Shown here: positions 51,011 through 51,999 of the stretch, piece by piece
Layout: each line of letters opens with the position of its first letter
Numbering within the stretch: the stretch's first letter is position 1
IMG/VR virus record: IMGVR_UViG_3300048591_000147
Coordinates: 186,001-250,000 of that record
DNA length: 64,000 nucleotides
Strand: one strand, 5' to 3'
Translations under genes and position numbers: made by a program
The notes under the pieces: model-generated
What the model was told of the DNA's origin: nothing
Databases searched by the model: none
What the model saw: only the letters and a program-made list of their open reading frames with translations

Positions 51011-51366
51011 GATATTTCAATAGTGACGAAGATTATTATCAATACATTAAGAACTGGAAGGCTTTAGCGAATTCTGGGGAACTTAAGAGTCGCCCACATT
51101 TGTTTATGATACACAATATATTAAAAGATAGGGATGCGTTTCATGGATTTTCAGAGAATACTCGCCAGCATTCATTATTCTCTATCAACCTATCATTGGA
51201 CCACGAGTTACGGCTATATGGGTACACCGATAAGCGGTCATTCATTTTAAAACTTTTCGAAGGTACTAATTTAGATTCGAAACGCTTTATCGATAACCTA
51301 CGTGCAGTTAGTAGTGATATAATTAAAAAGGCTAGGGATATTGAGAATAATATAAATATGGGGTAA
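51007..51366 (+). CDS. Hypothetical protein coupled to HD-Pth2
   Basis: AAGGAG SD, ATGA overlap. Confidence 0.75.
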   Translation: MRYFNSDEDYYQYIKNWKALANSGELKSRPHLFMIHNILKDRDAFHGFSENTRQHSLFSINLSLDHELRLYGYTDKRSFILKLFEGTNLDSKRFIDNLRAVSSDIIKKARDIENNINMG

Positions 51367-51384
51367 AGGGATGTACAATATCCA

Positions 51385-51999
51385 ATGCGATATATCATAT
51401 TAATACTCTGTTTATTATTGTCAACACCAGTGTTTGCTCAAGTACCGGCAAACACTGGTGTATGTTTAAATGCTCAGGAAAATGAGCTAGCTATATCGGT
51501 CAATGCATATAGAGTCCAGAACGGGCTCCAACCAGTACCAGTATCATACTGGATATCAACAGTTGGGCAGTGGCATGTATGGGATTTGATGGATAATAAT
51601 CCTGTGTCTGCTTCCTGCAACATACACAGTTGGTCAAATATAATGCCATCTTTATGGCAGCCGGTATGTTATACGCCAGATCATGCACAAGCCGCACAGA
51701 TGTGGGGCAAACCTCGTCAAATTTCTGCAAATACCTTCACAGGAAACGGTTATGAGAATGCCGCAGTATCCGGCATTGATATAGACGCGCAAACTGCATT
51801 AGCGCTATGGAAAAATAGCTCGGCGCATAATGATGTGATTTTAAATCGTGGCATCTGGGCTGGAGTGACATTTCGTGCAATGGGAGTTGGTATATATCGT
51901 AATTATGCAGTACTCTGGTTTGCTGATGGTATTACTGATCCGGCAGGCACAATGACATTGTGTCAAACCGATAATATTTTTGCAAATGGATTTGAGTAA
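51385..51999 (+). CDS. Secreted CAP/SCP-domain protein with C-terminal DxIFxxGFE motif
   Basis: Signal peptide (VFA|Q), VNAYRVQNGL.P, GYEN, WKNSSAHNDVILN, AMGVG, WF; ends DNIFANGFE. Confidence 0.85.
   Translation: MRYIILILCLLLSTPVFAQVPANTGVCLNAQENELAISVNAYRVQNGLQPVPVSYWISTVGQWHVWDLMDNNPVSASCNIHSWSNIMPSLWQPVCYTPDHAQAAQMWGKPRQISANTFTGNGYENAAVSGIDIDAQTALALWKNSSAHNDVILNRGIWAGVTFRAMGVGIYRNYAVLWFADGITDPAGTMTLCQTDNIFANGFE

What the first reader, a model, noticed from the sequence alone, without database searches (positions are those of the whole stretch)
51351..51999. Late-expressed secreted CAP protein ending in a host-type DxIFxxGFE tail
Seen: perfect TATAAATA, signal peptide, CAP/SCP domain and terminal DNIFANGFE. 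From recall, not a search: D.IF..GFE tails end many secreted proteins of Xanthomonadales such as Dokdonella-like bacteria and are thought to be a sorting or anchoring signal. Inference: a host-derived gene placed under late control that uses a host surface-export route; it also hints at the host lineage.
Basis: partly seen in the sequence, partly recalled or inferred. Interest (0 to 1): 0.6.

Follow-up and report, generated by a model that had tools for sequence, protein, structure and literature searches.

The report
Phage-borne secreted CAP protein with host tail
A 315-kb wastewater phage carries a gene taken from Xanthomonadales-type bacteria for a secreted CAP-domain protein; the gene has its own T4-style late promoter and keeps a short C-terminal tag (…IFANGFE) that ends dozens of secreted proteins in those bacteria and for which I found no published description.

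Summary

- **Promoter:** TATAAATA lies at 51351-51358, 26 nt before the ATG of a 204-aa ORF (51385-51999).
- **Protein:** it has a Sec-type signal peptide, a divergent CAP/SCP domain (confirmed through its homologues and its predicted fold) and the ending DNIFANGFE.
- **Late control:** the phage encodes a gp55-like late sigma factor. Genome-wide, 17 of 35 TATAAATA sites sit 19-30 nt before a gene start, against 4% expected.
- **Origin:** the phage copy falls in a phage clade nested inside a clade whose named bacterial members are all Lysobacterales (= Xanthomonadales).
- **Host hint:** the capsid protein's nearest cultured relatives are Stenotrophomonas and Xanthomonas jumbo phages.
- **The tail:** FxxGFE followed by a stop codon occurs at least 10 times (up to 81) in 57 of 121 sampled Xanthomonadales genomes. 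It stays at chance level in 200 other Gammaproteobacteria.
  - In a 390-kb sample it is always at the C-terminus, on unrelated proteins, most of which have a signal-peptide-like N-terminus.
  - It sits where homologues carry known sorting signals.
- **Conservation in phages:** all seven phage-context copies keep the tail, written with different synonymous codons.

What the tail does, and what the CAP protein does for the phage, are inferred, not shown. I found no literature on the tail.

The parts
51351..51358 (+). T4-type late promoter motif TATAAATA, 26 nt upstream of the ATG, inside the 3' end of the upstream ORF
   Evidence: Genome-wide positional enrichment. The same motif lies 26, 24 and 20 nt upstream in the phage copies L001, L040 and L042.
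51385..51999 (+). Coding sequence of the 204-aa secreted CAP-domain protein (P0001), stop codon included
   Evidence: 158 homologues found. Gene GC 0.42 and GC3 0.33, matching the phage.
51385..51438 (+). Predicted Sec signal peptide, residues 1-18, with cleavage after VFA
   Evidence: Sequence, heuristic, conservation in homologues. Predicted, not shown.
51439..51963 (+). Mature CAP/SCP domain, residues 19-193, with four conserved cysteines (C27, C78, C95, C193)
51964..51996 (+). C-terminal tail after the last conserved Cys, residues 194-204 (QTDNIFANGFE). The core DNIFANGFE is at 51970-51996. Confidence is low in the model, consistent with a flexible tail.
   Evidence: last block pLDDT 64; tail consensus; kept in all 7 phage copies with synonymous codon changes; genome census.
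31389..31991 (-). gp55-like late sigma factor of the phage, the factor expected to read TATAAATA promoters
   Evidence: phrog_234 'late sigma transcription factor', E 2.2e-25.
51007..51366 (+). Upstream 119-aa ORF of unknown function whose 3' end holds the promoter. The order HD-domain gene, 119-aa gene, CAP gene is the same in the related phage contig L001.

Best explanation
The gene is an add-on ('moron'-type) gene of a T4-like jumbo phage found in wastewater. An ancestor of this phage lineage took it from a Xanthomonadales (Lysobacterales) bacterium, and it has since drifted to the phage's low GC content.

Proposed mechanism, with what is shown and what is inferred:
1. Late in infection the phage's gp55-type sigma factor transcribes the gene from its own TATAAATA promoter (inferred from promoter evidence).
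2. The precursor is exported by the host Sec system and its signal peptide is cut after VFA (predicted).
3. The CAP domain folds in the periplasm, with two likely disulfides (inferred from four conserved cysteines).
4. The flexible C-terminal tag …D-x-I-F-A-N-G-F-E-COOH is the same tag that ends dozens of unrelated secreted enzymes and surface proteins in the host lineage. The host's still-unidentified tag-dependent machinery reads it and carries the protein beyond the periplasm, to the cell surface or the medium (inferred).
5. My preferred guess for its role there is that the CAP domain alters or masks the envelope of the infected or lysing cell, giving exclusion of other phages or protecting progeny from debris. 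The precedent is the CAP domain of the plasmid surface-exclusion protein PrgA. This last step is the least certain.
For: **Anatomy:**

**CAP fold:**

**Late promoter:**
- 17 of 35 genomic TATAAATA sites lie 19-30 nt before a gene start, against 4.2% at random.
- A gp55-like sigma factor is encoded.
- The motif is kept 20-26 nt upstream in three other phage copies whose flanks differ.

**The gene belongs to the phage:**
- The gene order is the same in L001.
- Further phage-context copies are L002, L040, L041, L042 and L043.
- The gene's GC3 is 0.33, against about 0.8 in bacterial homologues.

**Bacterial origin:** the phage clade (support 99) is nested in an 80-row clade (support 98) whose named members are all Lysobacterales.

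**Host lineage:** the capsid protein is 59-65% identical to those of Stenotrophomonas and Xanthomonas jumbo phages. One of them, RAS14, comes from sewage and has 43% GC in the capsid region. The window's phage occurs in wastewater runs.

**Tail as a sorting tag:**
- It is strongly enriched and confined to one lineage.
- All 33 occurrences in a 390-kb sample lie 0-2 residues from a C-terminus.
- It is carried by unrelated proteins, 21 of 26 with signal-peptide-like N-termini: subtilases, propellers, beta-helices, GH44, an M36 peptidase.
- Seven of 26 carry NCBI's 'choice-of-anchor Q' domain; in the one member whose match position was reported (L021:14920-16386), that domain ends 11 residues before the C-terminus, directly ahead of the tail.
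- The M36 peptidase's relatives are named T9SS-, rhombosortase- or myxosortase-dependent.
- All seven phage copies keep G-F-E and the aromatic residue while the codons differ.

**Exclusion precedent:** the PrgA CAP domain appears among the fold matches; see bioRxiv 10.1101/2020.06.18.156562.
Against: - No experiment or paper links the tail to sorting.
- The tail lacks the transmembrane helix and basic cluster of sortase-type signals, and no machinery candidate emerged. No gene recurs next to tail-bearing genes in the sample.
- Metatranscriptome contigs of a ~93% relative cover only the scaffold and capsid genes, not this gene, so expression is unproven.
- The deposited gene call (P0002, 189 aa) starts at a downstream GTG that would remove the signal peptide.
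- Cultured relatives of the phage lack the gene, so it is dispensable for the lineage.
- The host is unknown.
- The bacterial neighbours of the homologues (an unknown protein and an alpha/beta hydrolase) say nothing about what the CAP domain does.
Confidence: 0.6

Rival explanations
1. The tail is real and specific to the lineage, but it is not an export or anchoring signal. It could be a C-terminal recognition or protection motif, for example a site for a periplasmic tail-specific or PDZ-domain protease, or a cap that stabilises secreted proteins. The phage protein would then act in the periplasm.
For: The tail is only about 9 residues long, has no membrane segment and ends in a free Glu carboxylate, which is the kind of feature that domains binding a C-terminal carboxylate read (established knowledge of PDZ domains). 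No sorting enzyme was found. The tail is flexible in the model.
Against: The tail sits exactly where homologous families carry proven sorting signals: choice-of-anchor Q and D domains, sorting-dependent M36 peptidases, and CAP homologues with a T9SS domain or a PEP-CTERM-like end. Its carriers are typical extracellular enzymes.
Confidence: 0.2
2. The gene is not under late control. The TATAAATA is a chance AT-rich octamer or is kept by the coding needs of the upstream ORF, and the gene is read through from the upstream block on the same strand.
For: The motif is not enriched within the window (4 sites against 8 expected). It lies inside the upstream ORF, and in L001 that ORF is homologous. Two low-GC phage-context copies (L002, L043) have no perfect motif directly upstream, and neither does the high-GC L041. 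No transcript evidence exists.
Against: Positional enrichment across the genome has P about 9e-15. L040 and L042 keep the motif 24 and 20 nt upstream; L040 follows a different upstream gene (233 aa), and L042's flanking sequence differs. A gp55-like sigma factor is present.
Confidence: 0.15
3. The transfer ran the other way, or runs often in both directions. The family would be a phage gene that bacteria acquire through prophages or transfer, so it says little about ancestry in the host.
For: Phage-context copies fall at three or more separate places in the tree. One lies in a high-GC phage scaffold (L041, GC 0.56).
Against: Bacterial members are far more numerous and diverse. Four Lysobacterales genomes share the same chromosomal neighbourhood around the gene. 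The tail is a hallmark of the bacterial secretome, whereas this phage has only one tail-bearing gene.
Confidence: 0.1
4. The gene is bacterial contamination or an assembly chimera within the phage record.
For: The nearest named homologues are bacterial.
Against: The gene's GC and GC3 match the phage. The locus has the same gene order in an independent phage contig. Wastewater contigs (run X1) with no differences from the window cover parts of the upstream 119-aa ORF and of the gene, though none bridges the junction between them. A phage late promoter is in place.
Confidence: 0.01

Closest known systems
Bacterial SCP/CAP-domain proteins (Pfam PF00188; YkwD-type; structures 4IFA, 4H0A, Borrelia BB0689)
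   Same: Same fold (Foldseek E 7e-6 to 3e-4). The 'W-x-N-S-x-x-H-x-x-x-I-L' region aligns. They are secreted proteins.
   Different: The window protein misses the Pfam threshold. The family has its own four-cysteine pattern and a lineage-specific C-terminal tail. The biochemical function is unknown for it, as for most bacterial members.
PrgA of the enterococcal plasmid pCF10 (CAP domain, surface exclusion)
   Same: A CAP-domain protein encoded by a mobile element and displayed outside the cell (fold match 6z9k, rank 14, weak; paper found).
   Different: PrgA is Gram-positive, LPXTG-anchored, large and has a long stalk. The fold match is weak (E 0.25). The exclusion role is only an analogy here.
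C-terminal sorting signals (LPXTG/sortase, PEP-CTERM/exosortase, GlyGly-CTERM/rhombosortase, MYXO-CTERM) and the T9SS C-terminal domain
   Same: Strictly C-terminal. Found on many unrelated signal-peptide proteins in one genome. Confined to a lineage. Interchangeable with those signals in homologous families.
   Different: There is no transmembrane helix or basic cluster after the motif, and the protein ends at G-F-E. It is about ten times shorter than a T9SS domain. No processing enzyme is known or was found.
T4 late genes (TATAAATA promoters read by gp55/gp33 with the sliding clamp)
   Same: A perfect octamer at the expected distance from the start codon, a gp55-like sigma factor in the genome, and positional enrichment genome-wide.
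   Different: Timing was not measured. gp33 and gp45 homologues were not sought. The capsid and scaffold genes themselves lack a perfect octamer directly upstream.
SCP-domain proteins annotated in uncultured tailed phages and giant viruses (BFVD entries)
   Same: Same fold in viral proteins (A0A6J5Q7R3 'SCP_bacterial domain containing protein', E 2.8e-5).
   Different: Those are annotations only. As far as I could find, none has been linked to a host-specific C-terminal tag or to a late promoter.

Membership tests
CAP/SCP superfamily (PF00188) | Sequence match to the family model above the curated threshold | tested here: inconclusive
   The protein's own score is 14 bits against a cut-off of 21.1 (E 0.091), and NCBIfam YkwD gives 4.9e-5, far below its cut-off. 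However, 37 of 58 homologues at 45-81% identity match PF00188 (best 2.1e-9).
CAP/SCP superfamily (PF00188) | Alpha-beta-alpha sandwich fold of CAP domains | tested here: met
   The model (pLDDT 94.2) matches 4ifa, 4h0a, 4d53, GAPR-1, Pry1 and PR-1 with probability 0.94-1.0.
CAP/SCP superfamily (PF00188) | Conserved His/Glu residues lining the CAP cavity | tested here: inconclusive
   H81, E124 and H148 are invariant, and E32, H64 and H100 nearly so. I did not map them onto the cavity in the model.
T4-type late gene | TATAAATA at the -10 position, a short distance upstream of the start codon | tested here: met
   Motif at 51351-51358, 26 nt before the ATG. The typical spacing in this genome is 19-30 nt.
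T4-type late gene | The phage encodes the gp55-type late sigma factor | tested here: met
   Window 31389-31991 (-), phrog_234, E 2.2e-25.
T4-type late gene | The transcript appears late and starts at the promoter | not testable with these tools
   Only assembled contigs from metagenome and metatranscriptome runs were available, and none from true RNA libraries covers the gene.
Sortase-type tripartite C-terminal sorting signals | Signature motif followed by a hydrophobic transmembrane stretch and a basic cluster | tested here: not met
   The protein ends at G-F-E, and 0-3 residues follow in homologues.
Sortase-type tripartite C-terminal sorting signals | A dedicated processing enzyme distributed together with the signal | not tested
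   No candidate was available. A search for recurring neighbours in a 390-kb sample found none. Full phylogenetic profiling is not possible with these tools.
T9SS C-terminal domain | A folded C-terminal domain of about 80-100 residues (e.g. PF18962) | tested here: not met
   The tail is 9-11 flexible residues. PF18962 occurs instead of the tail in the homologue P0101.
Xanthomonadales 'GFE-tail' secretome (operational class defined here) | [DE]-x-[ILV]-F-x-[NDS]-G-F-E within 0-3 residues of the C-terminus, plus an N-terminal signal peptide | tested here: met
   The ending DNIFANGFE is the commonest variant. Signal peptide.
Xanthomonadales 'GFE-tail' secretome (operational class defined here) | The tail determines where the protein ends up | not testable with these tools
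   This needs fractionation with and without the tail in a tail-rich host.

The most novel reading that the evidence does not exclude
The …Φ-F-x-[ND]-G-F-E-COOH ending is an undescribed kind of bacterial C-terminal export or anchoring signal. It would be short, lack a membrane segment, be read in the periplasm by machinery specific to part of the Xanthomonadales, and serve tens of cargo proteins per genome. Several unrelated phage lineages would have captured a tagged CAP protein so that the infected cell itself delivers a phage-encoded factor to its surface late in infection, for example for exclusion or to protect progeny.
Probability: 0.3. Interest if true: 0.8.

Novelty: new variant of a known kind. 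Interest (0 to 1): 0.62.

Why it matters
1. **A possible new sorting route.** The tail marks a large secretome: at least 10 and up to 81 strict matches per genome in about half of the sampled Xanthomonadales, an order that includes plant-associated and wastewater bacteria. Nobody seems to have described it. If it is a sorting signal, it defines a new export or anchoring route with a very small, portable tag.
2. **A functional test supplied by nature.** Seven phage-context copies keep the tag under purifying selection, which argues that it works during infection.
3. **A host marker.** For an uncultured jumbo phage the tag points to the host lineage independently of capsid phylogeny, and the two agree here. 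Host-specific sorting tags on phage add-on genes could become a general aid to host prediction.
4. **Phage biology.** A late-promoter, Sec-exported CAP protein is an unusual phage accessory function and is worth testing for exclusion or envelope remodelling.

Tried and rejected
- **Cultured phages:** tblastn of the protein against 50,697 phage records found nothing. The gene is known only from metagenomic phage contigs.
- **Enrichment within the window:** TATAAATA is not enriched there, so the whole genome was needed.
- **Literature:** four searches and one targeted read on the tail found nothing relevant. 'FANGFE' matched only a herbal-medicine name.
- **NCBIfam:** no model matched the tail itself.
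- **Sorting machinery:** a search for a gene that recurs next to tail-bearing genes in 390 kb of a tail-rich genome found none.
- **Bacterial gene neighbourhood of the CAP homologues:** an unknown protein and an alpha/beta hydrolase are conserved downstream in four Lysobacterales genomes. This says nothing about function.
- **Expression:** the public runs gave only contigs. The true RNA libraries hold a ~93% relative's scaffold and capsid genes, not this gene, so this is no evidence either way.
- **Contamination or chimera:** rejected on composition, shared gene order and matching wastewater contigs.
- **Low phage GC (39%) as an argument against a high-GC host:** rejected, because the capsid region of Stenotrophomonas phage RAS14 has 43% GC.
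- **Not run:**
  - The large representative protein search was not needed, since the word search was rich.
  - Complex prediction was not used because there is no candidate partner.
  - Correlating rhombosortase or exosortase families with tail counts was considered and dropped, because the tail has no membrane segment.
- **Unpublished genome:** G161 was one of the 200 genomes in the class-level tally and gave one match, at chance level. No claim depends on it.
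Full report
**What is there**

The window is bases 186001-250000 of a single 314,956-bp virus record with 39% GC. At 51385-51999 (+) lies a 204-aa ORF. A perfect TATAAATA sits at 51351-51358. It ends 26 nt before the ATG and lies inside the last codons of the upstream 119-aa ORF.

The product starts MRYIILILCLLLSTPVFA|QV, a textbook Sec signal peptide. It passes a crude heuristic and is conserved in homologues. The product ends …C-Q-T-D-N-I-F-A-N-G-F-E.

The gene closes a block of + strand genes: an RF-1-like gene, a tRNA-synthetase-like gene, an HD/PTH2-like gene and the 119-aa gene. Its stop lies 1 nt from the stop of a gene on the opposite strand. The scaffold and Gp23-type capsid genes follow.

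**CAP domain**

The protein's own Pfam CAP match is below threshold (E 0.091). Three further lines settle the question.
- The word search found 158 homologues at 41-81% identity, and 37 of 58 aligned members hit PF00188 (best 2.1e-9).
- A profile of the family hits the SCP-domain structure 4IFA.
- An AlphaFold2 model (pLDDT 94.2, pTM 0.87) matches bacterial SCP proteins 4ifa and 4h0a, Borrelia BB0689, GAPR-1, Pry1 and plant PR-1.

Four cysteines of the mature part are conserved: C78 and C95 are invariant, and C27 and C193 are present in at least 90% of members. This fits an oxidising, extracytoplasmic location. The residues after C193 have low confidence (final block about 64), so the tail is a flexible appendage rather than part of the fold.

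**Late promoter**

Within the window the octamer is not enriched. In the whole genome there are 35 copies. Seventeen are followed at 19-30 nt by an ATG that opens an ORF of at least 60 aa, against 4.2% for random positions (P about 9e-15).

The phage encodes a gp55-like late sigma factor at window 31389-31991, minus strand (phrog_234, E 2.2e-25).

The octamer is also present in three other phage copies.
- It lies 26 nt before the signal-peptide Met in the related contig L001, which has the same gene order.
- It lies 24 nt before the start in L040, behind a different upstream gene (233 aa).
- It lies 20 nt before the start in the IMG/VR contig L042.

Late control is therefore well supported as an inference, but it has not been observed.

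**Which phage, and where**

The capsid protein is most like those of Stenotrophomonas phages CM1 and RAS14 (60%) and Xanthomonas phages XacN1 (59%) and Xoo-sp13 (65%). All are jumbo phages of 309-385 kb. RAS14 comes from sewage and has 43% GC around its capsid gene, so a low-GC phage on a high-GC Xanthomonadales host has precedent.

Public runs that hold this stretch are wastewater and freshwater metagenomes. One wastewater run yields contigs identical to parts of the gene and its flanks.

**Origin of the gene**

Cultured phages lack the gene, but six other contigs with a phage context carry it:

| Locus | Identity to the window protein | Context |
|---|---|---|
| L001 | 81% | same order: HD gene, 119-aa gene, CAP |
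| L042 | 80% | IMG/VR contig |
| L002 | 75% | small ORFs with essentially no family matches |
| L040 | 62% | small ORFs with no family matches |
| L043 | 60% | 306,759-bp IMG/VR contig |
| L041 | 58% | 182-kb scaffold, 56% GC |

Among the species-representative genomes, the best cellular matches are:
- a 'Xanthomonas sp.' metagenome-assembled genome and a Lysobacterales one (58% each);
- two Rhodanobacteraceae assemblies (55%);
- Chiayiivirga flava (54%);
- Marinicella (52%).

Acidobacteriota, Krumholzibacteriota and Desulfobacteraceae follow at lower identity.

In a maximum-likelihood tree of 123 rows, the window protein and four close relatives form a clade with support 99. Three of the five rows have a confirmed phage context. 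This clade sits inside an 80-row clade (support 98) whose named members are all Lysobacterales. The other phage-context rows fall elsewhere in that clade, so at least three gains or losses of the phage label are needed.

The gene's GC3 is 0.33, like the phage, against about 0.8 in the bacterial homologues. The capture is therefore not recent.

**The tail**

I back-translated F-x-x-G-F-E plus stop into a 21-nt pattern and counted it in whole genomes. The tool's built-in control is the same pattern read backwards.

| Genomes searched | Matches per genome | Control |
|---|---|---|
| Five Lysobacterales genomes holding a CAP homologue | 19-49 | 0-1 |
| 121 genomes drawn evenly from the same GTDB order | 57 genomes with at least 10 (maximum 81), the rest 0-9 | at most 5 |
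| 200 genomes drawn evenly from the rest of the class | none reaches 10; the maximum of 9 is one repeated element | – |
| Marinicella gelatinilytica | 14 | 1 |
| One Acidobacteriota and one Krumholzibacteriota genome | chance level | – |

The codons and stop codons vary freely, so selection acts on the peptide.

I then read 390 kb of the richest genome. The regions were chosen around hits, so their density is biased upward. All 33 F..GFE occurrences in ORFs of at least 80 aa lie 0-2 residues from the C-terminus, and none is internal.

The carriers are unrelated to one another. They include subtilases, DUF5122 propellers, beta-helix proteins, a GH44 glycosidase, a PQQ dehydrogenase and Ig-like repeat proteins. 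Of 26, 21 pass the signal-peptide heuristic.

**Why a sorting tag is the best reading**

- Seven of those 26 proteins carry NCBI's 'choice-of-anchor Q' domain, and in the one member whose match position was reported it ends directly ahead of the tail. One carries 'choice-of-anchor D'.
- One is an M36 peptidase whose nearest curated families are named T9SS-dependent, rhombosortase-dependent and myxosortase-dependent.
- These families are defined by carrying different C-terminal sorting signals in different lineages. Here the GFE tail occupies that slot.
- The CAP family shows the same pattern. Members outside the Xanthomonadales end in a T9SS domain (PF18962, P0101), a PEP-CTERM-like hydrophobic stretch plus KRRK (P0113), a '…LLTPILQLLLQ' ending, or stop right after the last Cys.
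- The tail is not a member of any known class. It has no membrane segment or basic cluster and is far shorter than a T9SS domain.
- I found no paper and no NCBIfam model for it.
- No candidate machinery appeared next to tail-bearing genes.

**Use by the phage**

All seven phage-context copies end in Φ-[FY]-x-x-G-F-E (one has an extra Glu). Their codons differ synonymously (GGA/GGG/GGT, TTT/TTC, GAG/GAA) and so do their stop codons, while the proteins are only 58-81% identical to the window's. The tag is therefore under purifying selection in phages. The CAP gene is the only tail-bearing ORF in this phage.

**Function of the CAP domain**

This is unknown. SCP proteins are annotated in uncultured phages and giant viruses. 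The CAP domain of the plasmid surface-exclusion protein PrgA is a weak fold match and a functional precedent (bioRxiv 10.1101/2020.06.18.156562, found).

My working guess is a surface or extracellular role late in infection, either exclusion or protection of progeny from debris. It is an inference and is marked as such.

**Limits**

- No expression data exist for this gene. The true RNA libraries hold only a ~93% relative's scaffold and capsid genes.
- The host is unknown.
- The tree is unrooted (midpoint root, for drawing only) and came from a quick search.
- The deposited gene call starts at a downstream GTG (P0002). The conserved signal peptide argues for the ATG at 51385.
- One unpublished genome (G161) was among the 200, at chance level. 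No claim depends on it.

**Verdict**

The phage gene is a new example of a phage capturing a host secretome gene. The tag it carries looks like an undescribed variant of C-terminal sorting signals and is the more interesting part.

Noticed in passing
window 48786-51010 (+): A block of translation-related genes sits just upstream: a 227-aa protein with a weak RF-1 domain match (below the Pfam cut-off), a 198-aa class II tRNA-synthetase-like protein (phrog_4806 'histidyl tRNA synthetase', 6e-42), and a 268-aa HD-domain protein with a weak PTH2-like C-terminal part.
   Followed up: partly
CAP homologues P0069, P0073, P0084, P0086, P0091, P0093 (not in the window): One well-supported clade of CAP homologues ends instead in a conserved '…(K)LLTPI(L/M)QLLLQ' tail. 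This looks like a second C-terminal tag not matched in my Pfam/NCBIfam scans, in other bacteria.
   Followed up: no
G000:C1, several sites outside the window (e.g. 18183-19013, 33438-34310, 96027-96953): Several perfect TATAAATA promoters precede ORFs with GIY-YIG-like N-termini, which look like homing endonucleases. T4 seg and mob genes also have late promoters (the family was judged by eye, not scanned).
   Followed up: no
G000:C1:84065-84544 and 16259-16750 (outside the window): Two further genes behind late promoters encode envelope proteins: one with a lipoprotein-type signal (…LSLFAC) and one with an N-terminal membrane helix. They are candidates for spanin or holin-type lysis genes.
   Followed up: no
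window 52545-54931: Metatranscriptome contigs from two studies (runs X5, X6; about 2.4 kb, ~93% identical) cover exactly the scaffold and capsid genes and begin at 52545. This suggests an abundant late transcript unit of a close relative in wastewater.
   Followed up: partly
L044 (IMG/VR GVMAG contig, 2965-3663): A giant-virus metagenomic contig (28% GC) encodes a 38%-identical CAP homologue that ends in Ser/Thr/Gln-rich repeats instead of the GFE tail.
   Followed up: no
window 52001-52357 (-): The gene on the opposite strand, whose stop lies 1 nt from the CAP stop, matches phrog_1238 ('phosphoheptose isomerase', 3e-14) and has a DxDGT-type N-terminus typical of HAD phosphatases. It may be an envelope-sugar accessory gene.
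   Followed up: no
L003-L005, L017, directly downstream of the bacterial CAP genes: In four Lysobacterales genomes the CAP gene is followed by a conserved protein of about 280-320 aa with no Pfam match, and then by an alpha/beta hydrolase. The phage took only the CAP gene.
   Followed up: partly
window 51371-51403 (+): A 10-codon out-of-frame mini-ORF starts between the promoter and the CAP start and overlaps the first CAP codons. The purine-rich AAGGGA at 51366-51371 is the only Shine-Dalgarno-like element and lies 13 nt before the CAP ATG.
   Followed up: no
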